Positions 1,993 to 63,258 of a stretch of 64,000 bases of DNA are shown in pieces. The notes under the pieces were generated by a model. That model was not told where the DNA came from. It was given only the letters and a program-made list of their open reading frames with translations, and did not search any database. Where the stretch lies: positions 195,141-259,140 of IMG/VR virus record IMGVR_UViG_3300034072_001021. The stretch is one strand, 5' to 3'. The translations under genes and the position numbers were made by a program. Every line of letters starts with the position of its first letter. The stretch's first letter is position 1.

Positions 1993-2153
1993 ATGTTTAC
2001 CCCTATTGTATAGGAGATGTGCTCCGGGCAGGGTTGTGACCCTGTCGCCAAGGGAGGGTATTTCCTTTTCCCGGTTTTTATCGGTGTACACGCAGTAAAA
2101 ATAAACCCCACCAACTGATACGATGAAGCACGGAATGTAAATTCCATTCGAAT

Positions 2154-2184
2154 TATTCATGTAGATACATTATCAACGTGAATA
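2154..2184 (+). promoter_or_regulatory. putative early promoter (ATACAT core)
   Basis: TATTCATGTAGATACATTATCAACGTGAATA upstream of chimallin; the same core recurs at about 10 intergenic sites. Confidence 0.65.
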
Positions 2185-10928: not shown

Positions 10929-11049
10929 GTCCATGATTTCAAGGTAGAGACCAATCCATAAATCCCTAAAACGTTGATGCGTTTCGACACAGGAGCATGA
11001 ATTTGCTCCTGTGTCGCCTATACCCTTCGGCTGTATTTTATTCGAAGTG

Positions 11050-11081
11050 GTTTTGGCGATACATTATACCCTTGATCAAGT
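11050..11081 (+). promoter_or_regulatory. putative early promoter (ATACAT core at 11059)
   Basis: TTTTGGCGATACATTATACCCTTGA upstream of the gp68-like gene. Confidence 0.6.
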
Positions 11082-11095: not shown

Positions 11096-12673
11096 GTGAT
11101 GCAGATTCAAATGAGGATGCCGGTCGAAGGGCCGCACGGGAAGATCGATATCTCCCACGGCGAAGAGACCCTTTCCTTGCTGATCGGCAGCTACCATTCG
11201 GCAGCTATCACAGACAAAGAGAACCTGTTCAAGGAGGTAAATGAATTCATCAACCGCATGCTCAGTGACGAAGAGCAGGCAGTGCTTTGGGGTATCTACT
11301 CCGACGTGCGCGAATACCTGGGTACCGATGGCATCGTAGGCTCCTACTTCGTTCGAGAGGAAATCGAGAAGCTGGTGCGGAAGATGTACTCCATCGTGAC
11401 TTATGACCGTCTGCGCAGTTACGTGGATCGGGCTAACTTCAAGATCCCTGGCGATGTCAGTGAGGTCTTCAAGGAGTACAACGATCGTGGTCGTGTGAAC
11501 TACCGCAATCAGACCTACATCCGTGCTGACTACATGGATCTGCAGGCGCTGGCGTTGGGTCTGCGCTTGATGGTGCCGATCTGGGGCGTATTCATCCAGA
11601 ACGTCTCTGGCGATCATGGCAATGGGTTTAAGGAATCCGAAGCCGTCAAGATGATCGAGATCGCCGGTGTGGTCAATTGGCCTCCGTACAAACGCATGCT
11701 CGACTACGTTGAAGCGTGTGTGGGCAAGGATACGTCAGCAATCTCCATGACCACCGTCATGGCTGGTCTGTCCAGTGAAGAAGTGCCGCGTCACCTGATG
11801 GCCATGGCGCTGGTGCGCAAGATCGCTGTAGGTACGATCTCCACTGGTAGCGAATCCGAGTCCATGGCTCGTAACCTGTTCAACTACGTCAATGGTACGC
11901 TCCAGCGTATGGACGGCCGCTTCCAGAGTGTCACGGGTATCGTGATGCCGAAGAAGAGTCGTGCAGTCGATAAGTCTGATGAGGATAACTCGTCTGTATG
12001 GGATGACTACTCGCAGACCACCGACATCACTGAAGGTTCTCGTCAGCTGATCGAAGTGTTCTCCGAGAAGGTTGAAACGATCATCATGCGTTCCAACGAG
12101 CCGGTCGACATCTCTCGTGTCCAACAGTGCATTGCCATCTGTTCGCGCCACGAGTCCCGTCCGATCCTGCCGTTCCAGAAAGCGTTGATCTTCTGGGTCA
12201 TTCGCAGTATCTCTCCTGATGCCCGTGATCTGCTGACCAAGCAGACCATGCTACGCCTGATGGGTATTGCTCAGGCGATCCTGGCCCACTGTGGATATTA
12301 CGAACTTGCCATTCTGATCTCCGCAGAAGAGCACATCAACGAAGAAGGCGTCTCGTTCATGCCGACCGAGACTCGTAACAAGATCACCAAACAACAGGCG
12401 GAAATCCTCGACCAACAGTATCCTTACTACCGTCAAGAAACGAAGCGCCAAGATCCAGGCAAGCGGAGCAACGTGGCAGTCACTGCGATCGACATGATCG
12501 TAGCTGAGATGTCGGGCATCGCCTGGAAACCTCATGCGCCGCGCGACATCGTGGAGAAGATCCCGATGCTGACGCAATCTGGTTACATGTATATCTCCGG
12601 CGACATCAAACGTCAGCTGGCCGATATGATAATCCGTATCAACAATACACTCAGGGGGCAACATGGAGCTTAA
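11096..12673 (+). CDS. nvRNAP promoter-specificity (sigma-like) subunit, phiKZ gp68-like
   Basis: 525 aa; size and position in the gp68-69-70-71/73-74-75 block. Confidence 0.75.
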   Translation: MMQIQMRMPVEGPHGKIDISHGEETLSLLIGSYHSAAITDKENLFKEVNEFINRMLSDEEQAVLWGIYSDVREYLGTDGIVGSYFVREEIEKLVRKMYSIVTYDRLRSYVDRANFKIPGDVSEVFKEYNDRGRVNYRNQTYIRADYMDLQALALGLRLMVPIWGVFIQNVSGDHGNGFKESEAVKMIEIAGVVNWPPYKRMLDYVEACVGKDTSAISMTTVMAGLSSEEVPRHLMAMALVRKIAVGTISTGSESESMARNLFNYVNGTLQRMDGRFQSVTGIVMPKKSRAVDKSDEDNSSVWDDYSQTTDITEGSRQLIEVFSEKVETIIMRSNEPVDISRVQQCIAICSRHESRPILPFQKALIFWVIRSISPDARDLLTKQTMLRLMGIAQAILAHCGYYELAILISAEEHINEEGVSFMPTETRNKITKQQAEILDQQYPYYRQETKRQDPGKRSNVAVTAIDMIVAEMSGIAWKPHAPRDIVEKIPMLTQSGYMYISGDIKRQLADMIIRINNTLRGQHGA

Positions 12674-15548: not shown

Positions 15549-15555
15549 GCGGCAT

Positions 15556-15588
15556 AGAGGAGAGGGGCAACCCCTCTCCTCTTTCTTT
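15556..15588. terminator. hairpin terminator between convergent genes
   Basis: AGAGGAGAGGG-GCAA-CCCTCTCCTCT then TTCTTT. Confidence 0.8.
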
Positions 15589-15929: not shown

Positions 15930-15948
15930 CTAGAGTTCCTTGTTTGAA

Positions 15949-15981
15949 TTTTATTCAGCGATACATTATTCATACGGTAAG
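15949..15981 (+). promoter_or_regulatory. putative early promoter (ATACAT core at 15961)
   Basis: TTTTATTCAGCGATACATTAT upstream of the nvRNAP beta-C gene. Confidence 0.65.
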
Positions 15982-16011: not shown

Positions 16012-18210
16012 ATGAGTGACGAAAACCCAGACTATCATCAACTGTCGTCGTATGACGGCAACGTTCAGCTTCATCCGGAGCTGATGTCGTTGTATGGTCT
16101 CAATCCATTCATTCGTCACATCTCGGCTTCTCGAGCTGCGATGTTTACGAACAACCTTTCTCAGATGGTCGTCATCAAGAACCCGATGGCCAAACGCATC
16201 ATGTCCGGCATGGAGCGTCCGTTCGGGGAGACCACCTGTTCCATCGAATTCACCGATGATGTCGAAATTCTCGAAGTCATCCCACGATTCGCCCACACGG
16301 CAGGTGCTAACCGCATCCGCCATTCACCGCAAACAGCGGTGATCTACGAGAACCACGAGACCCACAAGATCGGCGTCAAGATGATTGTCGATTACCACAT
16401 CTCGCACCAGCACTTTGGTACCGAGTTCGTGCGTAACCGCGATGTCATCGACCAGCTGCGCCGCGGTGCACGGTTCCGTAAGGGCACCAAGCTCGCCCGT
16501 TCGCCATTGATCGATGATAATGGCAACTACTGCTACGGTCGTGAGACCAACGTGCTCATGTGCTCTGACGTGGCAGGGACTGAAGACGGCGTTAAGGTAC
16601 GCCGTGGCTACATCGAACAAATGGCTCCTACCGGTTTCGAGACCCGTGTCTTCGAGTTCGGTCGTGAGTACTTCCCCATCAATCAGTCTACTGTACCAGG
16701 CCAGTACAAGATCTTCCCGGACATTGGTGAACGTGTAAACAGCAGTGGTCTGCTGGTGGCTCTGCGTCGTTATGACCCCATCAGCGCCGTGGCCAACATG
16801 ACCAACGAAGCGCTGCTGCAGCCGGACTACATCTTCGACCGCAAACGTTTCGTGCAACACCTGGATGCGGAAGTGGTCGACATCAAAGTCGAACGCAACA
16901 CGTCCATCAATATCCCGCCCTTGCCAGTCGGGATGGAAGCGCAGTTGTTGAAGTACTACAACGCTGACACCGAGTTCTATCGGAAGATCGTTGACGTCTG
17001 GATGGATCTGCGTAAGAAGTGCAACCAGCGCAAGATCCAGCTGGAGCTGGAAGACGAGTTCAGTCAACTGGTGTACGAAGCTATCGGTCGTGTAGGGCCG
17101 GACTATCTGCGCCATGACGGCGGTTTCGGCCGTAGCGTTGATGAAACCATCAAGGTGGACAAAGTCTACCGTGGTGTCAAGATCGATGCCTGGCGCGTGG
17201 AGATCAAGTTCAAGTACCTGTCGATCCCCAACAAGGGCTACAAGATCACCGATATCGACGGCGACAAGTCCGTAGTGGTAGAGGTGGTTGATGATGAAGA
17301 CATGCCGCGCGATGAGAATGGCGTGGTGGTTGACATCGTCGTAGACCCCAACTCTCGCTGGAACCGAGTAACTCCGGCATCCCCCATCGAGATGGTGATC
17401 GGTGCATCTGGCCGTGATCTGGGTAAGCGCATCCAAGCCTCGTTCGGCTACGACATGAATGTCCAGCTGAAAGAAGAAGAGTGCGAAGATGCGGTGTATC
17501 GTCCTGAGAACCTCGAACTGGTCAAGGCAGCTTATGCTGAACTGCTCGAGTACTACAAGGTCGTAGCGCCATTCCAGTACGAAGACATGACAGATCCTGA
17601 GTTCCTGGCGAAGAACCCGGAGCACATGTACGATCATGTCAAGTCCGTGCTGCTGGATCACATGTACGGGCTGTATCTGTACATGCCGACCAACAACCCA
17701 GTCCATATGCCGACTGTGATCTCGACGATCCGCAAGCGCTGGCCGCCGTTCATTACCCCGGTGCGTTTCCGTGGTCGTGATGGCAAGATGAAAGTATCGC
17801 GCGAACCGATGCTGATCGGTCCGTCGTACTACATCAACCTGGAGAAGACCGCAGAAGACTCCTGGATGGCCGCTGCATCGTCGCGTTGCAACGTGTTTGG
17901 CACTACTGCGCGTCTGAGCAACAACGACAAGTACGACTCTCCCGGCCGCGAGTCCGGTATCCGAGTCGGCGAGTCTGAGATCCGCTCTGAGTCTGCTTAC
18001 TGTGGCGGTGAGGCAATTGCCGATCAGAAGGATGCCAGTAACAACCCGATTGCCCACAAGTTCGTGGCGCGTCGTGTACTTACCCATCCGACACCGACCA
18101 ACATGGAAGAGGCGCTGGATCGCAAGATCGTACCTGTGGGTGGTCATCGTCCGCTGGCATACATGCGGCACATGTTCGCATGCTCCGGTAAAGAACTGAC
18201 CAACGAATAA
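16012..18210 (+). CDS. non-virion RNA polymerase beta C-terminal subunit (phiKZ gp71-73-like)
   Basis: GTEDG, GYKITDIDGDKSVV, VDPNSRWNR, GIRVGESE correspond to conserved beta regions; RBS AAGGGG before ATG 16012. Confidence 0.92.
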   Translation: MSDENPDYHQLSSYDGNVQLHPELMSLYGLNPFIRHISASRAAMFTNNLSQMVVIKNPMAKRIMSGMERPFGETTCSIEFTDDVEILEVIPRFAHTAGANRIRHSPQTAVIYENHETHKIGVKMIVDYHISHQHFGTEFVRNRDVIDQLRRGARFRKGTKLARSPLIDDNGNYCYGRETNVLMCSDVAGTEDGVKVRRGYIEQMAPTGFETRVFEFGREYFPINQSTVPGQYKIFPDIGERVNSSGLLVALRRYDPISAVANMTNEALLQPDYIFDRKRFVQHLDAEVVDIKVERNTSINIPPLPVGMEAQLLKYYNADTEFYRKIVDVWMDLRKKCNQRKIQLELEDEFSQLVYEAIGRVGPDYLRHDGGFGRSVDETIKVDKVYRGVKIDAWRVEIKFKYLSIPNKGYKITDIDGDKSVVVEVVDDEDMPRDENGVVVDIVVDPNSRWNRVTPASPIEMVIGASGRDLGKRIQASFGYDMNVQLKEEECEDAVYRPENLELVKAAYAELLEYYKVVAPFQYEDMTDPEFLAKNPEHMYDHVKSVLLDHMYGLYLYMPTNNPVHMPTVISTIRKRWPPFITPVRFRGRDGKMKVSREPMLIGPSYYINLEKTAEDSWMAAASSRCNVFGTTARLSNNDKYDSPGRESGIRVGESEIRSESAYCGGEAIADQKDASNNPIAHKFVARRVLTHPTPTNMEEALDRKIVPVGGHRPLAYMRHMFACSGKELTNE

Positions 18211-18244
18211 TCGGGAGGGGCAACCCTCCCTCATGGAGATAACG

Positions 18245-20335
18245 ATGCGTCGAATCACTGCACGCAGTTTCATGAACCTCGACATCCATGCGATGTGGCC
18301 ACTGCCTGATGAAAAGATGGAAGTGGAATTCGATGACGGTGTCATCGAGACCAACACTCGCCGCATGGTGCTGAGCTGGTTCTGTTGGGAACTGCATCGT
18401 AAGTTCCCACTCACCCCGTTGAACAAATCCCACTATGTGGGCAATGGGTTCCCGAGTGCGGACATGGTGCCGAAAACCATCTCCAACATCGTCCACGACC
18501 TCCACTACACCTACTTCGGTGACGGTCATCCTGAGATCCGTGATCACGATGCTGTGTATGATCGTGAAGAGGTATGGCGGGTCGTTAAGGATGTAGGTAA
18601 CGAGATCTACAACGTCCTGTCGATCAACCTGGAAGAGTGGCAAGTATCGATCAACGCGTTCCATCTGGACGAGCTGTTCTGGTACGAACCTATCGTCAAG
18701 ATCCGCGACTCGCTGGAGCCTACCCAGATCTCCATCAGCCATGCGCTCGATGCAGCTGGGCAGATCCTGATGAAAGATCCGGCGATTCTGCACAACCCGA
18801 TCGTTCGGGGCCTGCGCAGTAAGCAGATCAAGATGGGCCAGTTCCTGCAGATCCTGGTGTGCCTGGGCTTCCGAGACGACCTGGATCAGACCATCTTCCG
18901 GAAGCCGGTGATCAAGGGCTTCTATGAAGGTCTGACCACCTTGCACGATATCATGATCGAGTCGTGCTCGGCCAAGAAGGCGCTGATGTTCACCAAGAAG
19001 CCTCTGCAGATCGTAGAGTACTTTAACCGTAAGATGCAGCTGTCTACGGTGGTGGTCGATAAGCTCCTCTGGGAAGACTGTGGGTCGGATCGCTACTCCG
19101 AGATCTACGTGGACTCCGTGATCCTGCCGCACCTGGAAGGTAAGCTGTACCTGGGCTCCAATGGTAAGCTGACGCCGGTACGTCAAGATGACCACAAGCT
19201 GGTGGGTAAAACCATCAAGATGCGCTCTGCGTTCAACTGCAAGCATCGTGGCGAAGGGGCTGTCTGTCGTGTCTGCTTCGGTGAACTGGCTTGGTCGATT
19301 CCTCGCTTCACTTCCCTCGGTCACACCTGTGCTACCGAACTGTGCCGTGAGGGTTCTCAGCGTACGCTGTCCGTCAAGCACTTGGACGGTAGTTCGATGG
19401 TGGAGGTCATCGAGATCCCGGAAGAGTATCAGTCGTACATCGAAGTCTGCGCAGCCAACACCGACGCCGATGGCGATGGTAACGTGGAACTGCAAGTGGA
19501 CGTCGAGCTACTCGGTGAAGAGATCCCGCAGAGTGCCGATGAAAGTTCGCTGATCAAGTTCAACTCGCGTATCGCCAAGATGACCCCCATGCTCATCCTG
19601 AAGTCGACTCCCGAGAAGAATATCGAGAACGCGTCCAACCTGGTGAACCTGAACAAGGACACCAACATCAAGCACCTGAACATCCATCGCTTCACTGCGT
19701 TCCGTGAAGTGCAGTTGCGGATGGTCAACCTGCGTGAAGAAGCCACTGAGGTCTACGTCCCGGTAAGCCAGGGTGCCCGTCTGGGTTCCTTGACCCGCCT
19801 GCTCCTGAACCACATTCAGGAAAATGGCTACACTGTCGACGAGAACGGTGACTTCTGCATCGACCTGAGCAACTGGGACTTCTCGTCCCCGGCGTTCAGC
19901 CTGCCGCGTCGTCATGCCAGTACGCTGGACTTCATGGCAGAGGTCGAGGCATTCATTCGCTCGCCGTCCAAGAAGTCTGAGCGCAATGGCTTTGCTGGCC
20001 GTATGCTCACCAGTTACACCGACCCTGTGACGGCACTGGTAGACTTCAGCGATCTGGTCAACTCAAAGCTGCGTGTTAACATCGCGCCCTTGGAGGTAAT
20101 CCTGCTGAGTCTCATGCGTCCTGCCGATGATCCTGACGACTATAACCTTCCGGATTACGATCGCCCGATCAAGTTCGAAGAACATCGTCGGCTGATCCAG
20201 GAACGCTCCGCTGGCCAGATCTTCGCCTACGAACGGCAACCGGACTACATCGAGGATGTCAACGCGTATTCGCCGCACAAGCGCACGCCCGGCCTGCTCG
20301 ATCCGTTTGTGTTCCCTGAGGTGATCAATACCTGA
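18245..20335 (+). CDS. non-virion RNA polymerase beta' C-terminal subunit (phiKZ gp74-like)
   Basis: EYFNRKMQL bridge-helix region, EDCGS, RSAFNC..VCRVCFG Zn site, QRTLSVKH trigger-loop region. Confidence 0.92.
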   Translation: MRRITARSFMNLDIHAMWPLPDEKMEVEFDDGVIETNTRRMVLSWFCWELHRKFPLTPLNKSHYVGNGFPSADMVPKTISNIVHDLHYTYFGDGHPEIRDHDAVYDREEVWRVVKDVGNEIYNVLSINLEEWQVSINAFHLDELFWYEPIVKIRDSLEPTQISISHALDAAGQILMKDPAILHNPIVRGLRSKQIKMGQFLQILVCLGFRDDLDQTIFRKPVIKGFYEGLTTLHDIMIESCSAKKALMFTKKPLQIVEYFNRKMQLSTVVVDKLLWEDCGSDRYSEIYVDSVILPHLEGKLYLGSNGKLTPVRQDDHKLVGKTIKMRSAFNCKHRGEGAVCRVCFGELAWSIPRFTSLGHTCATELCREGSQRTLSVKHLDGSSMVEVIEIPEEYQSYIEVCAANTDADGDGNVELQVDVELLGEEIPQSADESSLIKFNSRIAKMTPMLILKSTPEKNIENASNLVNLNKDTNIKHLNIHRFTAFREVQLRMVNLREEATEVYVPVSQGARLGSLTRLLLNHIQENGYTVDENGDFCIDLSNWDFSSPAFSLPRRHASTLDFMAEVEAFIRSPSKKSERNGFAGRMLTSYTDPVTALVDFSDLVNSKLRVNIAPLEVILLSLMRPADDPDDYNLPDYDRPIKFEEHRRLIQERSAGQIFAYERQPDYIEDVNAYSPHKRTPGLLDPFVFPEVINT

Positions 20336-22670: not shown

Positions 22671-22672
22671 GC

Positions 22673-22696
22673 TAGGGAGGGGTCATCCCCTCCCTA
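22673..22696 (+). terminator. hairpin without U-tract
   Basis: TAGGGAGGGG-TCAT-CCCCTCCCTA. Confidence 0.55.
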
Positions 22697-22721
22697 TGCC
22701 CAACTACCAAGAGGAATGACC

Positions 22722-23681: not shown

Positions 23682-23699
23682 TCCATCACAATCCATCGA

Positions 23700-23738
23700 T
23701 TCGAATTTATTTCAACAATACATAGTGCTGTTGAATAA
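23700..23738 (+). promoter_or_regulatory. putative early promoter inside an inverted repeat
   Basis: 24 nt identical to 39572-39595; TTCAACA-N11-TGTTGAA flanks ATACAT. Confidence 0.75.
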
Positions 23739-23763
23739 ACCAATCGAATCGATGGAGGTTCGC

Positions 23764-24006: not shown

Positions 24007-24016
24007 AAGGATTACG

Positions 24017-24061
24017 GCATAGAGGGAGGCTCAGGCCTCCCTCTATGTCTATTTCTTTTTT
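24017..24061. terminator. bidirectional hairpin terminator
   Basis: GCATAGAGGGAGGC-TCAG-GCCTCCCTCTATGT plus T-tract. Confidence 0.85.
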
Positions 24062-31199: not shown

Positions 31200-31622
31200 A
31201 TGAACCTCCATGTGGGCGATCGGAGGTTCGGTTACACGCAGCTACAGAACTACGAGGAACCCTCTGTTCTGGACAAGGTGCTGTCTTCGTCCGAAAAGAC
31301 GCTGGACAGCATTGCTGCACAAATTGTGACTACTGAATGCTACGACGATTATTTTGGAATCTACGGGAACAGTTCCCAAGGCGACAGCCCTCTATCTTTG
31401 ATAGGGATGCATGAACCTGAAGACCTGGCTCTCGTAGACCCGTACGACGTGTACCTTGAGCGGTACTTGGCTGCCAACGTACTTAAGTTTACGGGGATGA
31501 CGTTTCAAGAGTTCATGACTCTTACCAAAGATCGTGGTGAAGCTATCCTTCGGCGTTGCGATGCCATGGCATCGAAAGAAGACTCAGAAGTAGCCCATCT
31601 GGTTGCTGGAATGAAGCCATAA
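31200..31622 (+). CDS. conserved hypothetical protein, 140 aa
   Basis: Co-transcribed with the previous gene and followed by a terminator. Confidence 0.75.
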   Translation: MNLHVGDRRFGYTQLQNYEEPSVLDKVLSSSEKTLDSIAAQIVTTECYDDYFGIYGNSSQGDSPLSLIGMHEPEDLALVDPYDVYLERYLAANVLKFTGMTFQEFMTLTKDRGEAILRRCDAMASKEDSEVAHLVAGMKP

Positions 31623-31654
31623 AGGCAGGGGGTAAATCCCCCTGCTTTCTATTT
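31622..31654 (+). terminator. intrinsic terminator
   Basis: GCAGGGGG-TAAAT-CCCCCTGC plus TTTCTATTT. Confidence 0.7.
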
Positions 31655-31665
31655 CGAATTAAAGG

Positions 31666-31691
31666 AAGTTATACATTATAAAGATATAACC
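31666..31691 (+). promoter_or_regulatory. putative early promoter (ATACAT core at 31671)
   Basis: GTTATA-CATTATAAAGA-TATAAC inverted repeat around the core. Confidence 0.65.
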
Positions 31692-34393: not shown

Positions 34394-34468
34394 TCACGCT
34401 TAGCAAAGTGGTAATGCAGCAGACTGTTAATCTGCCTACCCCTGGTTCGAATCCAGGAGCGTGAGCCA
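34394..34468 (+). tRNA. tRNA-Asn (GTT)
   Basis: Acceptor TCACGCT/AGCGTGA, anticodon arm GCAGA-CTGTTAA-TCTGC, TTCGAAT loop, encoded CCA. Confidence 0.95.
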
Positions 34469-34469
34469 T

Positions 34470-34650
34470 ATCCGTAAACTACTGTTTCGACAGGAGGGGT
34501 GAAAATCCCAACACGGTGTCCCAGAAGTACCGGCGTAAGCTGGGTTCTCCGGGCCTTAACCTAGCTGGTTGACTGGTCGGTGCTTTGCATCTAAGTCCGC
34601 TTCAGGACATCAACTATAAATAGGGCTGGAGACAGCCCCATTTATTCTCT
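34470..34650 (+). ncRNA. candidate structured RNA C ending in a GNRA terminator-like hairpin
   Basis: GGGG-TGAAAAT-CCC T-loop-like element, GGC-GTAA-GCT, GGGCTG-GAGA-CAGCCC then T-rich. Confidence 0.4.
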
Positions 34651-34670
34651 TTCGTCAGAAAGGGAAGAAT

Positions 34671-34796
34671 TCAAGTGATTGGAAACCGTGCACCGTGTGA
34701 TTCGGGCTTAGCCTTAAGACACCATTAACGTCTGAGGGGTGATCCTTTACAACCGCATCTGCAGTTGTGGTGGTTTGACTCCACCCGCTTGTCTCA
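34671..34796 (+). ncRNA. tRNA-like element with expanded core
   Basis: T-arm GGTGG-TTTGACT-CCACC (34769-34785); CAAGTG/CGCTTG acceptor-like pairing. Confidence 0.35.
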
Positions 34797-34800
34797 AACC

Positions 34801-34887
34801 GGGGAGCCCCCAGAGGGTGCTAATCTAGCCCGCTACATCCGTACTCTCCCGTCGGGTACACCAGGGTGTCTGGCCTGCTCCCCACCT
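34801..34887 (+). pseudogene. degenerate tRNA-like element
   Basis: Perfect 7-bp GGGGAGC/GCTCCCC followed by ACCT; internal CCCG/CGGG and CCAG/CTGG stems; no TTC loop. Confidence 0.45.
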
Positions 34888-34892
34888 ATTTC

Positions 34893-34966
34893 GCCTCTAT
34901 AGCTGGAAGGTCAAGCAGCTCACTTGTAATGAGCCGATCTCAGTTCGATTCTGAGTGGAGGCACCA
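34893..34966 (+). tRNA. tRNA-Thr (TGT)
   Basis: Acceptor GCCTCTA/TGGAGGC, anticodon arm GCTCA-CTTGTAA-TGAGC, TTCGATT loop, encoded CCA. Confidence 0.95.
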
Positions 34967-34970
34967 TATT

Positions 34971-35341
34971 GGGACTGATCGGCGTCGTCACTGGTTATTC
35001 TGAAACCTAAATGCGCAAGCACATGGTTATGGATATAAACGATCAACGAAAGTGAAGTCGTTGCAATGACGAACGATCAGCCCCTCTCAAGCGCGCTTGT
35101 AAGAATGTACTCGGTTGCCGATCCAAAGTAACCCTCGTAAGGTGAATTCAGCGTATAGACCTCAGGATGAGGGAAAATGCCCGGACACGAGAGGAACACA
35201 TTCTTACAAGTGGATTATTTACCGTGTAGTCTCTCAGGCGGGACACTCTCCACAGGAGCCTTCGGCACCACCACCCCACCCTATAGTGACTGGTGACCTG
35301 TTGGTGTGGAGAGGCATGTTCGATTCTAGTGCACGGTACCC
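34971..35341 (+). ncRNA. candidate structured RNA D (about 370 nt, tmRNA-sized, tRNA-like ends)
   Basis: Starts 4 nt after tRNA-Thr; 13-bp perfect helix 35096-35108/35198-35210; GNRA and UUCG hairpins; GGGACTG/CGGT(A)CCC end pairing. Confidence 0.6.
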
Positions 35342-35477
35342 TATTTCGATGATCGGCCTCGACTGCTGGCAGTGTGCCCTCAGGGTTGTGGAGATAACCT
35401 GAACGGATGACGGCAGTAAGGGCGGTGTCCACTACCCTAGAAACTTGGGTCATCGAACGAACAAAAGGACAGTGAAT

Positions 35478-35933
35478 GTGAAATGGGTCACCTGGATCGT
35501 TTCGTTATTGTTCGTGTTTGTCATGCACTACGCCGACGCTTACCCTCTCACCGAGATCAAACTTCTCAGTGATGACGTGACCAGCGTTTATGATGGCGAT
35601 ACGCTCACTGTCCAAGTGCCCTACATTCCAGACGTGTTTGGTAAAGACCTCTCCATCCGGATTGTGGGTATTGACACACCTGAGATGCGTAGTACGTGCG
35701 CAACTAAGGAACAACGTGATCGTGAGAAAGCTTTGGCCATCAGGGCCAGAGACGTAGTGGTTGCCATGGTTACATCGGGTCATCGAGTGACCCTGACCAA
35801 CCTCGATCGAGATAAATACTTCCGTATGCTAGCAAGTGTTTATGTCGACGGACGAAGTGTTTCCGATGAGCTGATAGCTCAAGGACTAGCCGTCCCTTAT
35901 TCAGGCGACACCAAGATAGGCTGGTGTGGCTAA
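35478..35933 (+). CDS. thermonuclease (SNase-like) with N-terminal signal/TM anchor
   Basis: VYDGDT, IRIVGIDTPE, DKYFRMLA, LIAQGLA; hydrophobic WVTWIVSLLFVFVM; GTG start after AAAGGA. Confidence 0.9.
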   Translation: MKWVTWIVSLLFVFVMHYADAYPLTEIKLLSDDVTSVYDGDTLTVQVPYIPDVFGKDLSIRIVGIDTPEMRSTCATKEQRDREKALAIRARDVVVAMVTSGHRVTLTNLDRDKYFRMLASVYVDGRSVSDELIAQGLAVPYSGDTKIGWCG

Positions 35934-35944
35934 TGATTCCACTG

Positions 35945-35985
35945 GTTTTATTTTTGCAGATACATTACTCATCTGACAAATAACC
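35945..35985 (+). promoter_or_regulatory. putative early promoter inside a long imperfect hairpin
   Basis: GGTTTTATTTTTG-CAGAT-ACATTACTC-ATCTG-ACAAATAACC. Confidence 0.65.
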
Positions 35986-35995
35986 AATGGAGGTT

Positions 35996-36544
35996 ATGAT
36001 GGGTAAACTAACGGGCTGGACTGTCGACGACGAGGAAGAAGTATTCGTTCCCTGTCCAGACTATCCAGACCTTTTCGACATAGGTTCTAAAGGGACTCTT
36101 AGAAGCCGCCGTACTGGTAAAATCTTATCCCAAACCCCTGACCATAAAGGCTACCTTAGACATGCCACTAAAATAGGCGGTCGTTCAGGTAAGTCGATTT
36201 GCGTAAGGGTTCATGTTCAGGTTGCTAAAGCATTTGTTGGAAGAGAATCTGACGATCTGCAAGTAAACCATCTGACAGGCGATAAGGCAAAGAACGATTA
36301 TACATCTCTCGAATGGTGCACTGGTAGTCAGAACTTAGAGCATGCACATGCTACTGGCTTAATGCGTAATGCCAAGGGAGTTGACCATCCATTAGCAGCA
36401 CTTTCTCCCGAAGATGTTGCGGTTATACTTTCTCTTAAAGGGAAGGTTAGTCAGAGAGAACTCGGAAGAAGATTTGGGGTAAATAAATCAACCATAGCCA
36501 GAGTCCATAATGGAATCGGTTATGGTGAAGAAGACCCTAGCTAG
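35996..36544 (+). CDS. free-standing HNH homing endonuclease (NUMOD4-like N-terminus, HTH C-terminus)
   Basis: VHVQVAKAF..QVNHLTGDKAKN..LEWCT..QN; C-terminal SQRELGRRFGVNKSTIARV. Confidence 0.88.
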   Translation: MMGKLTGWTVDDEEEVFVPCPDYPDLFDIGSKGTLRSRRTGKILSQTPDHKGYLRHATKIGGRSGKSICVRVHVQVAKAFVGRESDDLQVNHLTGDKAKNDYTSLEWCTGSQNLEHAHATGLMRNAKGVDHPLAALSPEDVAVILSLKGKVSQRELGRRFGVNKSTIARVHNGIGYGEEDPS

Positions 36545-36588
36545 TACTCCGCCAAACAACACCACTCCAAACCAAAAGAGTAATTGAG

Positions 36589-36765
36589 ATGACCACCACT
36601 GTACGAGTTGAAGCTCACTGCGCTAACAACAAGCAAGTTGTCGTGACCATCCAGAACCGTGTTTCCGGTGAGGTGCATGAAACGTTCATCTTGCAGGACG
36701 GTGAAAAAGCTGATCGCGTTGTCTACGACGATCGTCAGCTGCTGACCCATGAAGAATTGAAGTAA
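36589..36765 (+). CDS. small hypothetical protein, 58 aa (not in ORF track)
   Basis: MTTTVRVEAHCANNKQVVVTIQNR...HEELK; phage-like codons; upstream AAGAG. Confidence 0.65.
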   Translation: MTTTVRVEAHCANNKQVVVTIQNRVSGEVHETFILQDGEKADRVVYDDRQLLTHEELK

Positions 36766-36772
36766 AAGTTTT

Positions 36773-36975
36773 GGGATCTTAGCATAGTCCTGTGGGCTTT
36801 TGACACGGGGTGGTTAATGCGCCTTGCGGTACTCTTATCGGTGTATAGGGCAGTAGCGCATGTGGGTGGTTCTGCATGTTAGCGAAATCCCACAAGACCA
36901 GTGGGTTAATCAGGAATCCGAACGGTAAGAAAAGACGCAAAGGAGAAGGGGGTTCGAATCCTCAATTTCCCGCCA
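36773..36975 (+). ncRNA. candidate RNA E: tRNA-framed 203-nt RNA with insertions
   Basis: 5' GGGATCT-TAGCATAG..TGGTTAATGC D-arm with inserted hairpin; 3' GGGG-TTCGAAT-CCTC and ATTTCCC-G-CCA. Confidence 0.6.
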
Positions 36976-37127
36976 AACACGCCTCCTCAGAAGGGAGCTA
37001 GCCGCCTCCGAGGTCCATCCGGAGGAGGGTTCGATGTGTAACACCCAGATGGACTGTTGTACGATCTGGACATGTACCAGCCGCAGCAAGTGACTACGGT
37101 TGAAGCAGTAACCGAAACAAGCCTCTG

Positions 37128-37156
37128 ACTCCCTGCTGGTCAAACCGGCAGGGAGT
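37128..37156 (+). terminator. hairpin terminator closing the RNA cluster
   Basis: ACTCCCTGCTGGT-CAA-ACCGGCAGGGAGT. Confidence 0.7.
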
Positions 37157-37190
37157 TATGCTCCTATTCCATAAACGCAAGGGGTAAACC

Positions 37191-37571
37191 ATGAATATCC
37201 AACACATTCGTCAAATCCACAAGAAAGATGTACATGCACTGTATATCTGGAACGGGGATACCGTATCCATGCTGGAGAATAACATCTCCGTCCAAGTCTA
37301 TGTCAACGAGACCCCCATCGAAATCGACAGTGATTCTGTCATGATCAACGATGATGGCTCTGGTTACATTTTCAACGTCCGCTCCAATGATGTTGAGTGG
37401 CTGAAAACCTACGTAAAGGAAATGTTCCCTCATTTGATCGATGTAGGTCACCCCGTCGTAGATGGTGAAATATTCGATACGTGGTTTGCTTTCGTGGATG
37501 AACGTGGCGCCAAGGTCATCAACAACGATGACGCTGGCTGCACCATCGTGCAGTGGCCTGCCAATGGCTAA
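37191..37571 (+). CDS. hypothetical protein, 126 aa
   Basis: RBS AAGGGG; overlaps the next start. Confidence 0.75.
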   Translation: MNIQHIRQIHKKDVHALYIWNGDTVSMLENNISVQVYVNETPIEIDSDSVMINDDGSGYIFNVRSNDVEWLKTYVKEMFPHLIDVGHPVVDGEIFDTWFAFVDERGAKVINNDDAGCTIVQWPANG

Positions 37572-37755
37572 GGATCGTTTCTCCGAAAGTACGGAAAGCA
37601 TCTACCGCAACAGCCGGTACGTAGTCTCTCGCGAATTCGGTATAGCACCGAATGGCAATCGTTTCAACGGCATGTGGGTAGTACGTGATATCAAGACTGG
37701 CGAGTACGTTGAGCATTCCGCTCATCGACACGACATGCTTGAGAAGTACGTATGA
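37564..37755 (+). CDS. small hypothetical protein, 63 aa
   Basis: MAKDRFSESTES...; followed by a terminator. Confidence 0.6.
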   Translation: MAKDRFSESTESIYRNSRYVVSREFGIAPNGNRFNGMWVVRDIKTGEYVEHSAHRHDMLEKYV

Positions 37756-37787
37756 GGGGAGGAGGGCGATCCCTCCTCTTCTTTTTT
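37756..37787 (+). terminator. intrinsic terminator
   Basis: GGGGAGGAGGG-CGAT-CCCTCCTCTT plus T-tract. Confidence 0.75.
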
Positions 37788-37798
37788 GCCTGATTCTT

Positions 37799-38392
37799 AT
37801 GACATTAACCAACTTGGTCACTGCTATGATTTCGATGGAAGCAGCAAAGAAAGAATGGCATCCTGAGTTCACTCCTTCCTTTACTCCGGAGGAGATGCTC
37901 AAGATGGGTGTCTTCGAAGGCAAGTACATCAATATCATCAAGGGTATCCCTAGCTCGTGGAAGAAACTTCCTAAAGTCGTAGGCCCGAAGGATGAAGCTG
38001 ATGTGGAGCTGAACTACTATAAGATCAAGTCACGTCAGCCTCTGTCTGTCTGGAAGAAGAACGGATGGATCATGACGGATGAAGGCGGATGGTTCCATTG
38101 GTACTGTCTCTACTATCTGGGTCGTCGTCTCGGCAAAGAAGATGACACTCAGGTAGGGCGCTGGAAGAGCTTTGTGGCACGTCACATGGGTCAAGTCAAA
38201 GCCAGTTGCCGCCTCAACGATGAGAAGTGCCATACTAAGCAACGTCAAGGTCTTCTTCAGTGGGCTTGGGATTCGACCACGGCGTTCACTGATGAACAAC
38301 GTGAGAAGAACCTCAAGCGTATGCTGAAGCTGACAGGAACATCTCTACCAGAAGTATCTCAGGAAAGCTTACCGCCTTCCTTCAGATGGTGA
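37799..38392 (+). CDS. conserved Trp/Tyr-rich protein with putative SME propeptide (candidate head-packaged cargo)
   Basis: FTPEEML.MGVFEGKY, GWF.WYC.YY.GRR, QVGRW..F..RH; N-terminal ISME/AA. Confidence 0.8.
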   Translation: MTLTNLVTAMISMEAAKKEWHPEFTPSFTPEEMLKMGVFEGKYINIIKGIPSSWKKLPKVVGPKDEADVELNYYKIKSRQPLSVWKKNGWIMTDEGGWFHWYCLYYLGRRLGKEDDTQVGRWKSFVARHMGQVKASCRLNDEKCHTKQRQGLLQWAWDSTTAFTDEQREKNLKRMLKLTGTSLPEVSQESLPPSFRW

Positions 38393-38430
38393 CATAATGA
38401 GAGGAGGGCATCTGCCCTCCTCTCTATGCC
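38393..38430. terminator. bidirectional hairpin terminator
   Basis: GAGAGGAGGGCA-TC-TGCCCTCCTCTC with TATGCC flank, between convergent genes. Confidence 0.8.
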
Positions 38431-38431
38431 G

Positions 38432-38785: not shown

Positions 38786-38843
38786 GGTTGTGGTCTCGAC
38801 TGTAGAGTCATAGGATCTGGTTAACTCAATCGTCTAATCAAAC

Positions 38844-38875
38844 TTATTTTAACAGCACATGATGAACTTGAATAA
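38844..38875 (+). promoter_or_regulatory. variant putative early promoter (GCACAT core)
   Basis: TTATTTTAACAGCACATGATGAACTTGAATAA aligns with the 39572 promoter. Confidence 0.5.
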
Positions 38876-38898
38876 CAAGCCATAAGGTGGAGGAACTA

Positions 38899-39516: not shown

Positions 39517-39522
39517 TACCGA

Positions 39523-39546
39523 GGAGGGCGGGATATCCCGCCCTCC
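39523..39546 (+). terminator. hairpin terminator
   Basis: GGAGGGCGGG-ATAT-CCCGCCCTCC. Confidence 0.7.
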
Positions 39547-39571
39547 CTTATTACGTACCCTTATTTTTTTA

Positions 39572-39610
39572 TTCGAATTTATTTCAACAATACATGATGC
39601 TGGTGAACAA
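39572..39610 (+). promoter_or_regulatory. putative early promoter
   Basis: TTCGAATTTATTTCAACAATACAT identical to 23700-23723. Confidence 0.75.
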
Positions 39611-39635
39611 TCCCCGATGATCTAAGGAGATCACA

Positions 39636-40376: not shown

Positions 40377-40431
40377 GTAATAACTCGGGGTCGATATCGA
40401 CCCCGATTACCCTTAGACCTGAGGAGGTCAC

Positions 40432-57375: not shown

Positions 57376-57383
57376 TGCGACAT

Positions 57384-57420
57384 ATACAGGGGAGCCTAAG
57401 GCTCCCCTGTATGCCGTTTT
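57384..57420 (+). terminator. hairpin terminator
   Basis: ATACAGGGGAGCC-TAA-GGCTCCCCTGTAT then GCCGTTTT. Confidence 0.8.
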
Positions 57421-57427
57421 GATTCGA

Positions 57428-57461
57428 CTATTTTTCAACAATACATAGTGGTGTTGAATAG
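57428..57461 (+). promoter_or_regulatory. putative early promoter
   Basis: TTTCAACAATACATAGTGGTGTTGAATA, one mismatch to 23710-23737. Confidence 0.75.
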
Positions 57462-61843: not shown

Positions 61844-63217
61844 ATGGAATTCACCCAAACCTCACTTGGTGAGGAGTATAGCCTCATTCAACAGCAGAAG
61901 TTCGACACCTATGCTGAGTATGAGGCCGCCTTCATCACTGACGAAGGTGAGTACCCTGTAATTACGGTAGTCAGTATCGAATGGATTCGTGATTACCGTA
62001 ATGCATCTGCCGATGAGACACAGATCACCGTAGGCATTGAGTGGGGCAAGTATCTGAACCGGGTCTTGCCGTTCAAAGAGAACCTGAAGATGCGGGTGAC
62101 CAAACGGATCATCAACCGCAATGGGTTTGAACTCCCACTCCCCATGATGGAACAGACATTCATTGCTCACCTTCCTCAGGAAGAGGAAACTGACGCCATG
62201 GGCAATCGCCCAGAGACAGCCAGTGAGCGAGTGTCTGATCTGATGGGTATCAAGAAGGTCAGTGTGCAGTTGGAGGAAGAAGCTTTCTCCAGGACGCGTT
62301 CCGAAATGGTCGGTGGCGTCTTCCGTGACTCGAGACCGTATGACATCTTGATTGCGTTGCTCAACAACTCGATCAAGAACATGGATCTGGATAAAGAGAA
62401 CTCCATCAAAGGGATCTCCGCAGTCCCGCCCAACAACATGCAGAAGCGTTCGCACACAGTTCTTCCGCATGGTGTCCCGCTCGTAGCAGTGGCCAACAAA
62501 CTCCAGAAGCAATTCGGTGGTATCTACAACTGTGGTATTGGTTGTTATCTGCAGAAGGGCTTCTGGTACGTCTGGCCTCTGTACAACTACAAGTTGTACG
62601 ACACTGCTGAAAAGACAGCGTTGTTCATTCTCCCTCCCAGCACCCGCTATCGAGGGATCGAATACACCTATCGTAAGAACGGCACTAACTTCGTGGTCAT
62701 GGTCACGGGTGGTTATTCGAAGGTAGACCCTTCTGAAGGCAAGTTGCTGAACGAAGGTAATGGTACGCGCTTTGCCAACACTGATGTCATGATGGAATCA
62801 TTCGTCAGCGTGAAGGGTAACAAGGCAACTGCGTTCCGTAACAACAACGCTAACGAGTACGAAGCTGTTCCCAGAAAGGGCACTAAGATGAATCGGGTGA
62901 CTGACGACATGGCTCAGTCGAATCCGTTCAATGAGGCGTCTAAGATTGCCGAGCGCAACGCTGCTTACGTGATCATGAACTGGGAAAACAGCGATCCAGA
63001 CCTTATCTTCCCCGGCCTACAGGCTGAAGTGGCCTTCATCGCTAACGGTAAAGAGCATTTCATCAATGGTGTTGTCGTGCATGCTCATGCATACTCGGCT
63101 CTGGCAGGTAAAGGTATCCATCAGAAGGCACATCAGGTCACTACCCAGGTAGTCGTGATGATTGATCGTCTGGCTCCGTCTTACAAGGCGTTTCTTGACA
63201 GTCAACAAAACGAATAA
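61844..63217 (+). CDS. probable baseplate hub/tail-tip protein (phiKZ gp101-like)
   Basis: 457 aa; GIYNCGIGCYLQ and NSDPDLIFPG; synteny. Confidence 0.7.
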   Translation: MEFTQTSLGEEYSLIQQQKFDTYAEYEAAFITDEGEYPVITVVSIEWIRDYRNASADETQITVGIEWGKYLNRVLPFKENLKMRVTKRIINRNGFELPLPMMEQTFIAHLPQEEETDAMGNRPETASERVSDLMGIKKVSVQLEEEAFSRTRSEMVGGVFRDSRPYDILIALLNNSIKNMDLDKENSIKGISAVPPNNMQKRSHTVLPHGVPLVAVANKLQKQFGGIYNCGIGCYLQKGFWYVWPLYNYKLYDTAEKTALFILPPSTRYRGIEYTYRKNGTNFVVMVTGGYSKVDPSEGKLLNEGNGTRFANTDVMMESFVSVKGNKATAFRNNNANEYEAVPRKGTKMNRVTDDMAQSNPFNEASKIAERNAAYVIMNWENSDPDLIFPGLQAEVAFIANGKEHFINGVVVHAHAYSALAGKGIHQKAHQVTTQVVVMIDRLAPSYKAFLDSQQNE

Positions 63218-63226
63218 AAAATAATG

Positions 63227-63258
63227 AAACAGTACATTATCATGACGATAGTGCACTG
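63227..63258 (+). promoter_or_regulatory. variant putative early promoter (GTACAT core)
   Basis: ACAGTACATTATCATGACGATAGTGCACTGT, imperfect hairpin. Confidence 0.5.

What the first reader, a model, noticed from the sequence alone, without database searches (positions are those of the whole stretch)
23700..23738. Putative early promoters sit inside inverted repeats, suggesting hairpin/cruciform recognition by the virion RNAP
Seen: an ATACAT core at 2165, 11059, 15961, 23718, 31671, 35960, 39590 and 57441, with variants at 38855 and 63232, all intergenic and on the + strand. Most are flanked by inverted repeats whose sequences differ between sites: TATTCATG/CGTGAATA, TTCAACA-N11-TGTTGAA, GTTATA-N11-TATAAC, CAGAT/ATCTG. 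The outer arms change together (TTTATT/AATAAA at 23706 versus CTATT/AATAG at 57428). The sites at 11059 and 15961 show little pairing. Known: phiKZ early promoters have an AT-rich TATATTAC-like core, and N4 virion RNAP recognises hairpin promoters. Inference: structure may be part of promoter identity here, which I do not recall being described for multisubunit phage vRNAPs.
Basis: partly seen in the sequence, partly recalled or inferred. Interest (0 to 1): 0.6.

Follow-up and report, generated by a model that had tools for sequence, protein, structure and literature searches.

The report
phiKZ-type early promoters, no hairpin needed
The ATACAT sites are ordinary early promoters of a nucleus-forming jumbo phage, built like the mapped early promoters of phage phiKZ, and the inverted repeats around some of them are a by-product of the promoter consensus in one subclass, not a hairpin the polymerase reads.

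Summary
The motif is real. All ten window sites belong to a family of 27 sites in the 259-kb phage genome. All are on the + strand and intergenic. The only close relative, Pseudomonas phage pPa_SNUABM_DT01, has 25 more.

The full consensus runs ATTCGAA, a T-rich stretch, TTCAaca, ATACAT-nAT, six bases, then G. Anchored on that G, it matches the phiKZ early-promoter consensus at 20 of 26 comparable positions. The sites also sit at the same syntenic places: before the nuclear-shell gene, the gp68 homologue and the non-virion RNAP genes. They are therefore phiKZ-type virion-RNAP early promoters, with the conserved G as the predicted start site.

The hairpin idea is not supported:
- Inverted repeats occur only in one subclass (22 of 52 sites). 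There they are part of a conserved extended consensus, and the 3' arm is the start-site element TGAA.
- The other 28 sites pair at background level.
- Stems around the core are no more frequent than in GC-matched natural DNA.
- Orthologous promoters do not preserve them.
- The homologous phiKZ columns pair in only 41% of cells.
- Loops of 8-15 nt with short AT-rich stems do not fit N4-like extrusion.

No transcript 5' ends could be obtained.

The parts
23699..23735 (+). Class R early promoter, the site of the finding. ATTCGAA 23699-23705, TTCAACA 23711-23717, ATACAT 23718-23723, TGTTGAA 23729-23735. Predicted start G at 23733; downstream ATG at 23764 (80-aa ORF).
2146..2182 (+). Class T early promoter upstream of the nuclear-shell (chimallin, phiKZ gp54) gene at 2243-4138 and the nvRNAP gp55 homologue at 4224-5687. 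Predicted start G at 2180. It has an 11-pair stem with two G:T pairs in a different register (i+j=8).
11040..11076 (+). Class T early promoter upstream of the phiKZ gp68 homologue (11096-12673). No inverted repeat.
15942..15978 (+). Class T early promoter upstream of the nvRNAP gp71-73 and gp74 homologues (about 16015-20335). No enclosing inverted repeat.
31652..31688 (+). Class T early promoter. GTTATA/TATAAC 6-bp repeat of -1.4 kcal/mol. Only 3 of its 6 pairs are kept in the DT01 orthologue. Position +15 is A here.
35941..35977 (+). Class T early promoter with a CAGAT/ATCTG 5-bp repeat. It lies at the edge of a segment that is replaced in metagenomic relatives.
38836..38872 (+). Class R early promoter with the variant core GCACAT. 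Arms TTTAACA / ACTTGAA pair at only 4 positions plus one G:T.
39571..39607 (+). Class R early promoter. TTCAACA / TGGTGAA pair at 6 of 7 positions, with an A:G mismatch inside the stem.
57422..57458 (+). Class R early promoter in a repeated terminator-promoter-5'UTR cassette. It has TTCAACA-N11-TGTTGAA and is followed by the GGAAGA-atga-TCTTCC hairpin.
63213..63249 (+). Class T early promoter with the variant core GTACAT. Its best fold puts the core in a stem, not in a loop.
57383..57413 (.). GC-rich terminator-like hairpin just upstream of promoter 57441. It belongs to the CATAGAG...CTCTATG(CC) hairpin family. This family and the 5'UTR stems are the intergenic hairpins supported by compensatory changes.

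Best explanation
The ATACAT sites are early promoters read by the virion-packaged multisubunit RNA polymerase of a nucleus-forming (Chimalliviridae-type) jumbo phage. They are homologous in layout to the mapped early promoters of phiKZ.

Recognition is of a long linear duplex motif. Numbered from the predicted start G, it reads:
- ATTCGAA at -34 to -28;
- a T/A-rich stretch at -27 to -23;
- TTCAaca at -22 to -16;
- an extended -10-like block ATACAT-nAT at -15 to -7;
- five unspecified bases at -6 to -2;
- T at -1, G at +1, and a weakly preferred A at +2.

The 'inverted repeat' is the chance partial complementarity of two of these blocks, TTCA at -22 to -19 and TGAA at -1 to +3. In one promoter subclass (class R, where the base after ATACAT is A or G) it extends to 6-7 bp. 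Members of that subclass are near-identical copies of a terminator-promoter-5'UTR cassette.

Shown: the motif, its strand bias, its conservation in a second phage, the match to phiKZ and the synteny.
Inferred: the start site, the early timing and the polymerase involved.
For: Motif and family
- 27 sites in the genome, all on the + strand; 25 more in DT01, 25 on + against one weak minus hit.
- DT01 pattern scan: 9 forward, 1 reverse, 0 in the controls.
- G at +15 in 49 of 52 sites and T at +14 in 41 of 52. This is exactly six bases after the conserved block, as in AR9 (AAATATATATTAT-(6N)-G with G as the start) and as stated for phiKZ and phiR1-37 (PMC5312081).

Match to phiKZ
- TATATTAC occurs 33 times forward and 9 reverse in phiKZ.
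- 26 of those promoters show T at -1 in 26/26, G at +1 in 23/26, and ATTCAAA at -34 to -28.
- Their consensus agrees with ours at 20 of 26 positions.

Synteny
- Window 2243-28260 is colinear with phiKZ gp54, gp55, gp68, gp71-74 and gp75, with gp80 and gp81 on the other strand.
- phiKZ early cores sit at matching places: 45568 before gp54, 57984 before gp68, 70339 after gp75.
- Predicted 5' UTRs are mostly 21-66 nt. phiKZ UTRs are typically 31-40 nt (PMC8244752).

Against a hairpin
- Class T (28 sites) pairs in 24-29% of cells in every register. Class R pairs in 59% (columns -8..-1) or 66% (the seven helix pairs), and only at one register.
- No excess of stems over GC-matched natural windows.
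- Mean fold energy is -2.84 kcal/mol against -2.56 +/- 0.25 for natural windows (P=0.14).
- On the 52-site alignment 58.5% of cells pair against 55.3% in column shuffles, so the pairing is almost all column composition.
- Homologous phiKZ columns pair in 41% of cells.
- Nine of ten DT01 class R sites carry an A:G or G:G mismatch in the middle of the stem.
Against: - No transcript 5' ends exist for this phage or for DT01. The public runs holding the sequence are wastewater assemblies kept as contigs. The start site, the timing and the polymerase rest on homology.
- Cognate 5' and 3' halves fold better than chimeras of non-cognate halves: -2.84 against -2.19 +/- 0.16 kcal/mol, 0 of 300.
- Column shuffles within class R give a small excess of pairs: 101 against 92.8 +/- 2.6, P=0.002.
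- A few changes look compensatory: A-T to G-C at -1/+11 between the two phages' consensus, C-G to T-A at -2/+12 in D100754, and the perfect TTCACTG/CAGTGAA at D244818.
- These signals are small and are confounded by paralogy and orthology of the copies. They mean a weak structural or dyad constraint in class R cannot be excluded.
Confidence: 0.77

Rival explanations
1. One reading: the virion RNAP recognises an extruded DNA hairpin or cruciform, as N4 does, with the ATACAT core presented in the loop.
For: - Perfect 7-bp repeats enclose the core at 23718, 57441 and two further genome copies. There are different-sequence stems at 2165, 31671, 35960 and at D244818.
- Four of the ten window sites fold with z below -2.4 against dinucleotide shuffles.
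- Cognate halves fold better than chimeric halves.
Against: - More than half of the sites have no stem, including those before the nuclear-shell and nvRNAP genes.
- No enrichment over GC-matched natural DNA.
- Register and loop content vary: the symmetry centre lies anywhere from +3.5 to +8, and the core is sometimes in a stem.
- Loops are 8-15 nt with AT-rich stems of 5-7 bp and energies of -1.4 to -5.9 kcal/mol as a free single strand. N4 uses a 3-nt loop on a 5-7-bp stem lying entirely upstream of +1, present at every promoter, and needs gyrase and SSB (PMC4496689).
- The 3' arm overlaps the predicted start site.
- Orthologues do not retain the stems, and the homologous phiKZ promoters lack the dyad.
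Confidence: 0.06
2. The dyad in class R promoters is real but acts on duplex DNA. TTCRAC at -22, its inverted copy at the start site, and the palindromic ATTCGAAT 11 bp upstream would be half-sites for a dimeric or repeated DNA-binding module. That module could be a polymerase specificity subunit, a co-injected factor or an early repressor, and it would set class R apart from class T in strength or timing.
For: - Three copies of a TTC(G/A)A(A/C)-like hexamer lie at fixed spacing: direct copies 11 bp apart and one inverted copy.
- Class R and class T are cleanly separable in both phages.
- Class R pairing is confined to one register.
- ATTCGAAT is a perfect 8-bp palindrome.
Against: - The same blocks, ATTCAAA and TTAAACAG, occur in phiKZ without the dyad.
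- The inverted copy is largely the start-site TGA, which class T and phiKZ also conserve.
- There is no candidate protein and no expression data.
- The similarity among class R copies runs for about 100 nt beyond the promoter, which points to cassette duplication rather than selection on the dyad.
Confidence: 0.12
3. The stem-loop acts in RNA. It would be transcribed by read-through from the upstream operon and serve as a processing or stability signal, with ATACAT in the loop.
For: - G:T (G:U) combinations are frequent at two pairs: C/T opposite G at -5/+15 and A/G opposite T at -4/+14. Counting wobbles raises pairing from 46% to 58.5%.
- The site 2165 stem needs two G:U pairs.
Against: - Strong terminator-like hairpins lie just upstream of many sites.
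- The transition-type variation is equally expected for plain promoter positions.
- Allowing G:T gives no excess over natural windows.
- The motif's homology with mapped phiKZ promoters explains its conservation without any RNA role.
Confidence: 0.04

Closest known systems
phiKZ early (virion RNAP) promoters: TATATTAC block, T-rich upstream element, start 6 nt downstream (Ceyssens 2014, as cited in PMC7598289 and PMC5312081; dRNA-seq in PMC8244752)
   Same: - The layout is the same when anchored on the start G: ATTC(G/A)AA at -34 to -28, a T-rich stretch, TT(C/A)AAC(A)(A/G) at -22 to -15, an extended -10-like AT-rich block ending at -7, five unspecified bases, then T at -1 and G at +1.
- 20 of 26 consensus positions are identical.
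- Strong bias to one strand.
- The same syntenic positions: before gp54, before gp68 and after gp75.
   Different: - The core reads ATACAT-tAT instead of TATATTAC.
- The host genome is 51% GC, so the motif stands out more.
- C replaces A at -20, which creates the TTCA/TGAA complementarity.
- No experimental start sites exist here.
AR9 early promoters: AAATATATATTAT-(6N)-G (PMC5312081)
   Same: A conserved AT-rich block, exactly six unspecified bases and a conserved initiating G. The promoters are read by an injected multisubunit RNAP.
   Different: AR9 has uracil DNA and is not a nucleus-forming phage. The block sequences differ, and no ATTCGAA upstream element is reported.
N4 virion RNAP hairpin promoters (PMC4496689)
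   Same: The promoters are used by a virion-delivered polymerase. Some sites here have inverted repeats around a conserved core.
   Different: N4 has a single-subunit T7-like RNAP. Its hairpin has a 5-7-bp stem and a 3-nt loop centred at -11, present in all promoters and lying entirely upstream of +1. It is extruded by gyrase-driven supercoiling and stabilised by SSB, and its non-conserved stem bases are free as long as they pair. None of these features is met here.
PeSL promoter-terminator cassettes of T4-type phages (PMC2839356, PMC4122927)
   Same: The class R copies are repeated composite units: a terminator stem-loop, an early promoter and a 5'UTR. They mostly precede short, poorly conserved ORFs (46-246 aa in 11 of 12 genome copies; the twelfth precedes a 465-aa ORF). 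Metagenomic relatives break or swap sequence at two of them.
   Different: The promoter type is different (phage RNAP, not sigma-70). A recombination role is only suggested by contig break points, which repeats can also cause.

Membership tests
Chimalliviridae / phiKZ-type virion-RNAP early promoter | A highly conserved AT-rich block of about 10 nt centred near -10 | tested here: met
   ATACAT is invariant at ACAT, and A at +7 and T at +8 are near-invariant in 52 sites. With the start at G+15 the block spans -15 to -7.
Chimalliviridae / phiKZ-type virion-RNAP early promoter | A conserved start nucleotide 6 nt downstream of the block | tested here: inconclusive
   At sequence level this is met: G in 49 of 52 sites six bases after the block, preceded by T in 41 of 52, as in 26 phiKZ promoters. 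No 5'-end data were available to confirm initiation there.
Chimalliviridae / phiKZ-type virion-RNAP early promoter | A T-rich element upstream of about -19 | tested here: met
   There is a T/A-rich stretch at -27 to -23 and TT at -22/-21, plus ATTCGAA at -34 to -28, matching phiKZ ATTCAAA.
Chimalliviridae / phiKZ-type virion-RNAP early promoter | Located upstream of early operons, including non-virion RNAP subunit genes, in a genome that encodes both RNAP sets | tested here: met
   Sites precede the homologues of gp54 (nuclear shell), gp55, gp68 and gp71-74. The homologue of vRNAP subunit gp80 lies on the opposite strand next to a virion protein gene and has no such site.
Chimalliviridae / phiKZ-type virion-RNAP early promoter | Transcription within minutes of infection, independent of host RNAP and of new protein synthesis | not testable with these tools
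   This needs RNA from infected cells with rifampicin or chloramphenicol. Only metagenome contigs were available.
N4-type hairpin promoter | An inverted repeat present at every promoter of the class | tested here: not met
   28 of 52 sites pair at background level (24-29%) in all registers. On the full alignment 41.5% of helix cells are unpaired.
N4-type hairpin promoter | A short, unusually stable hairpin (5-7-bp stem, 3-nt loop) able to extrude at physiological supercoiling | tested here: not met
   Loops of the core-enclosing stems are 8-15 nt with AT-rich stems. Single-strand DNA folds give -1.4 to -5.9 kcal/mol in the window, and several DT01 sites are near 0. Extrusion itself was not testable.
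N4-type hairpin promoter | Non-conserved stem positions covary so that pairing is kept | tested here: inconclusive
   There is a small excess over column shuffles (58.5% against 55.3%, 4 of 500; class R 101 against 92.8). This is within what related copies can produce. Orthologue comparison shows as many disruptions as compensations.
N4-type hairpin promoter | The hairpin lies upstream of the start site at a fixed distance | tested here: not met
   The 3' arm (-4 to +3) overlaps the predicted start G. Symmetry centres vary by 4-5 nt between sites.

The most novel reading that the evidence does not exclude
In the class R subset only, the complementarity between -22..-16 and -4..+3 is functional. 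It might let the displaced non-template strand fold back once the promoter melts, or it might bind a dyad-symmetric factor. Either would give a subset of virion-RNAP promoters a distinct strength or shut-off behaviour. That would be a structure- or dyad-assisted variant of multisubunit phage RNAP initiation.
Probability: 0.1. Interest if true: 0.55.

Novelty: new member of a known kind. Interest (0 to 1): 0.22.

Why it matters
The result gives a usable early-promoter model for a little-studied clade of nucleus-forming Pseudomonas jumbo phages (this genome and pPa_SNUABM_DT01). It supplies 27 and 25 sites, a predicted start site and two subclasses.

It also shows that the promoter layout is conserved with phiKZ, although the polymerase subunits compared here share only about 27-34% identity. 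That helps annotation, timing predictions and engineering of these phages.

It removes a tempting but unsupported parallel with N4. How the virion RNAP recognises promoters remains unsolved, and these data give no reason to expect DNA secondary structure to be part of it.

Tried and rejected
- RNA evidence. The one run search found only wastewater and sediment libraries kept as assembled contigs. Laying four of them on 34500-40400 showed relatives and mosaic break points but cannot show starts, strands or levels.
- Literature. The primary phiKZ transcription paper (Ceyssens 2014) is not held. The phiKZ dRNA-seq paper has no held supplement with start coordinates. The 6-nt rule is therefore taken from PMC5312081 and from the phiKZ sequences themselves.
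- PaBG as the identity of the phage: rejected. PaBG-type phages use a sigma-70-like factor and are not described with phiKZ-type RNAPs.
- A host sigma-70 reading of the motif: rejected, from the sequence itself. TTCGAA and TACATa are only 13 bp apart.
- Chimera tests. Swapping 5' and 3' halves between sites gave P values from 0.02 to 0.3 for stem length and below 0.003 for fold energy. I do not take this as support for a hairpin. GC-matched natural windows fold equally well, and ortholog and paralog pairs count one event several times.
- Shine-Dalgarno hairpins in the 5' UTRs looked specific to these transcripts. They are as common at other genes: 37% against 28-29% with stems of at least 5 bp, P=0.44.
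- The 'outer arms change together' claim was checked against the other cassette copies and fails.

Full report
**What the window is.** The window is the last 64 kb of a single-contig, 259,140-bp genome with 51% GC. The only close relative among deposited phages is Pseudomonas phage pPa_SNUABM_DT01. It shows 78% DNA identity over coding pieces, and one RNAP subunit is 70% identical as protein.

Profile matches and tblastn against phiKZ show that window 2243-28260 is colinear with a phiKZ gene block:
- gp54, the nuclear shell protein;
- gp55, a non-virion RNAP subunit;
- an SbcD-like nuclease;
- gp68, the fifth subunit of the non-virion RNAP;
- gp71-73 and gp74, non-virion RNAP subunits;
- gp75, a helicase.

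The homologues of gp80 (a virion RNAP subunit and head protein) and gp81 (a virion protein) lie on the minus strand. The phage is therefore a nucleus-forming, two-RNAP jumbo phage.

**The observation.** All ten coordinates carry ATACAT or the stated variants on the + strand, in intergenic DNA. A weight matrix built from them and run over the whole genome finds 27 sites. All are on the + strand and score 18-39 bits, against 16.6 bits for the best minus-strand hit. There is no additional site in the window.

DT01 has 25 sites with the same matrix, again all on +. A simple pattern gives 9 forward, 1 reverse and 0 in reversed-pattern controls.

Seventeen sites pair up as orthologues by their downstream genes.

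A gap-free alignment of all 52 sites (A1) gives this consensus, counted from the A of ATACAT:

| Position | Consensus |
|---|---|
| -22 to -13 | TCgATTCgAa |
| -12 to -8 | T/A-rich |
| -7 to -1 | TTCAaca |
| 0 to +5 | ATACAT |
| +6 to +8 | nAT |
| +9 to +13 | five unspecified bases |
| +14 | T (41 of 52) |
| +15 | G (49 of 52) |
| +16 | A |

**What the sites are.** The literature describes virion-RNAP early promoters of jumbo phages as a conserved AT-rich block centred near -10 (PMC7598289). For AR9 the consensus is AAATATATATTAT-(6N)-G, with G as the start. phiKZ and phiR1-37 are stated to have a conserved start 6 nt after the block (PMC5312081). phiKZ also has a T-rich element upstream of -19 and 5' UTRs mostly of 31-40 nt (PMC8244752).

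The present motif has exactly this layout: the block ends at +8, six bases follow, then the conserved G.

I fetched phiKZ and collected its TATATTAC sites, 33 forward against 9 reverse. After removing seven intragenic look-alikes, the 26 remaining show T at -1 in 26 of 26 and G at +1 in 23 of 26, with ATTCAAA at -34 to -28. Anchored on the start G, the phiKZ consensus and ours agree at 20 of the 26 positions where both have a majority letter.

The positions match too. phiKZ cores lie before gp54 (45568), before gp68 (57984) and after gp75 (70339). Ours lie before the gp54 homologue (2165), before the gp68 homologue (11059) and after the helicase block (23718).

Predicted 5' UTRs from the G to the first start codon with a ribosome-binding site are mostly 21-66 nt.

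I therefore read the sites as phiKZ-type early promoters with the start at core+15, which is 23733 for the site of the finding. The timing, the start and the polymerase are inferred by homology. No 5'-end data exist.

**The inverted repeats.** Five tests speak against a recognised hairpin.

1. *Frequency.* Allowing any register and loops of 6-16 nt, stems that enclose the core occur as follows, compared with GC-matched natural windows from the two genomes:

| Stem length | Observed (of 52) | Expected | P |
|---|---|---|---|
| at least 5 bp | 12 | 8.5 | 0.14 |
| at least 6 bp | 6 | 3.1 | 0.09 |
| at least 7 bp | 4 | 1.4 | 0.056 |

Three of the four stems of at least 7 bp are copies of one sequence. 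With G:T pairs allowed there is no excess at all. Mean single-strand DNA fold energy is -2.84 kcal/mol, against -2.56 +/- 0.25 for natural windows.

2. *Two classes.* Splitting by the base after ATACAT separates 22 class R sites (A or G) from 28 class T sites (T).
   - Class R includes window sites 23718, 38855, 39590 and 57441. These sites share an extended consensus, TTCAACa...ggTGAa.
   - Class T includes window sites 2165, 11059, 15961, 31671, 35960 and 63232.
   - Class R pairs in 59% of cells over columns -8..-1, or 66% over the seven helix pairs, and only in the one register that aligns those two blocks.
   - Class T pairs in 24-29% of cells in every register. The promoters before the nuclear-shell and non-virion RNAP genes are in class T.

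3. *Composition, not covariation.* On alignment A1 the seven-pair helix has 58.5% of cells paired when G:U is counted. Column shuffles give 55.3 +/- 1.3, and versions with the partner slid by one to three columns give 31-49%. Four of the seven pairs are unpaired in about half of the sites. Watson-Crick pairs alone make up 46%, against 41% expected from the columns. The small excess is within what related copies can produce. Inside class R it is 101 against 92.8 pairs.

4. *Orthologues.* Across the 17 orthologous pairs, the best stem of one phage is mostly not retained in the other.
   - The 31671 stem keeps 3 of 6 pairs.
   - Nine of ten DT01 class R sites carry an A:G or G:G mismatch in the middle of the arm.
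   - There are isolated compensatory-looking changes: A-T to G-C at -1/+11, C-G to T-A at -2/+12 in one site, and a perfect TTCACTG/CAGTGAA at D244818. They are matched by as many disruptions.

5. *Geometry.* The 3' arm (-4 to +3 from the start) is the conserved start-site element. phiKZ and class T also keep its TG(A). The 5' arm corresponds to phiKZ TTAAACA. A single difference, C instead of A at -20, creates TTCA opposite TGAA. The homologous phiKZ columns pair in only 41% of cells.
   - Symmetry centres differ by up to 4-5 nt between sites. At 63232 and genome site 36966 the core lies in a stem rather than a loop.
   - Loops of 8-15 nt and AT-rich stems of 5-7 bp give -1.4 to -5.9 kcal/mol even as a free single strand.
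   - N4 promoters have a 3-nt loop on a 5-7-bp stem. The stem is present at all promoters and lies wholly upstream of +1. Extrusion needs gyrase and SSB (PMC4496689).

**The claim that outer arms change together.** The claim rests on 23706 against 57428. It fails when the other copies are read. Genome sites 54910 and 163780 have the same 3' AATAGG as 57441 but carry A opposite the G. That GG opens a separate downstream hairpin, GGAAGA-atga-TCTTCC.

**Why class R copies look alike.** Class R copies are alike over about 100 nt or more. Each copy consists of:
- a GC-rich terminator-like hairpin ending in CTnTATGCCG;
- the promoter;
- a 5'-UTR hairpin, in five of the eight copies aligned;
- a short stem around the ribosome-binding site.

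They mostly precede short ORFs. This resembles the promoter-terminator cassettes (PeSLs) of T4-type phages (PMC2839356, PMC4122927). Cassette duplication, or strong selection on the whole unit, explains several perfect copies of the same 7-bp repeat without any selection on pairing.

**What remains open.** Three signals mean that a weak dyad or structural constraint in class R is not excluded:
- Cognate halves fold better than chimeric ones.
- There is a small within-class excess of pairs.
- The palindromic ATTCGAAT lies 11 bp upstream of TTCAAC.

I give about 0.1 to a functional dyad and 0.06 to true hairpin recognition.

**Limits.** One run search and one read-laying run were available, and both returned contigs only.

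**Verdict.** The motif is a real early-promoter family, a new member of a known kind. The hairpin interpretation is not supported.

Noticed in passing
window 769-804, 15554-15584, 22672-22697, 24016-24049, 38398-38425, 46276-46311, 57383-57413 (clear family members); 31622-31648 and 58105-58130 (divergent stems caught by the same scan); about 45 loci genome-wide: A family of long GC-rich hairpins (stems of 11-17 bp, loops of 3-4 nt) lies at gene 3' ends, often between convergent genes. The stem base is conserved ((GG)CATAGAG...CTCTATG(CC)), and the interior varies with full compensation. Many have no U-tract. They are probably (bidirectional) terminators for the phage RNAPs. The TATG at the 3' base equals the phiKZ late-promoter consensus, with G as +1, so a combined terminator and late-promoter role is conceivable.
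   Followed up: partly
window 23699-23735, 38836-38872, 39571-39607, 57422-57458 versus 2146-2182, 11040-11076, 15942-15978, 31652-31688, 35941-35977, 63213-63249: The early promoters fall into two classes in both phages. Class R (ATACAT followed by A or G) has the full ATTCGAA and TTCAAC...GGTGAA consensus and mostly precedes short ORFs. Class T (ATACAT-TATC) has weak upstream elements and precedes the conserved early genes (nuclear shell, gp68, nvRNAP subunits). Whether they differ in timing or strength is unknown.
   Followed up: partly
window 57459-57502; genome 54910, 59486, 105233 and 163780 regions; DT01 100754 and 227596: Five of the eight aligned genome copies of the class R cassette share a 5'-UTR hairpin, GGAAGA-atga-TCTTCC, starting about 5 nt after the predicted start. 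DT01 has a compensated variant, GGAGA-ataa-TCTCC. It is probably a 5'-terminal RNA stem.
   Followed up: partly
window 35934-36976 and 39571-39606: Wastewater and sediment contigs of close relatives diverge or swap sequence from 35719 or 35934 up to 36976; the 35934 break lies 26 nt upstream of the 35960 promoter core. Several contigs share only the 36-bp promoter core at 39571-39606, with other flanks. This is compatible with cassette-mediated gene shuffling, or simply with assembly breaks at repeats.
   Followed up: no
window-wide, e.g. 23745-23763, 39619-39632, 57485-57496: Many ribosome-binding sites sit at the loop/3'-arm junction of a short hairpin whose arms differ from gene to gene. 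This is not specific to promoter-proximal genes: 37% against 28-29% have stems of at least 5 bp, P=0.44.
   Followed up: yes
window 34394-34468 and 34893-34966: tRNA-Asn(GTT) and tRNA-Thr(TGT) genes lie on the + strand. DT01 has tRNA-Asn and tRNA-Asp at the corresponding place.
   Followed up: no
window 2243-28260: The gene order is colinear with phiKZ gp54-gp81, at only 24-34% protein identity: nuclear shell, nvRNAP gp55, SbcD-like nuclease, gp68, gp71-74, helicase gp75. vRNAP gp80 and virion protein gp81 are inverted relative to phiKZ.
   Followed up: partly
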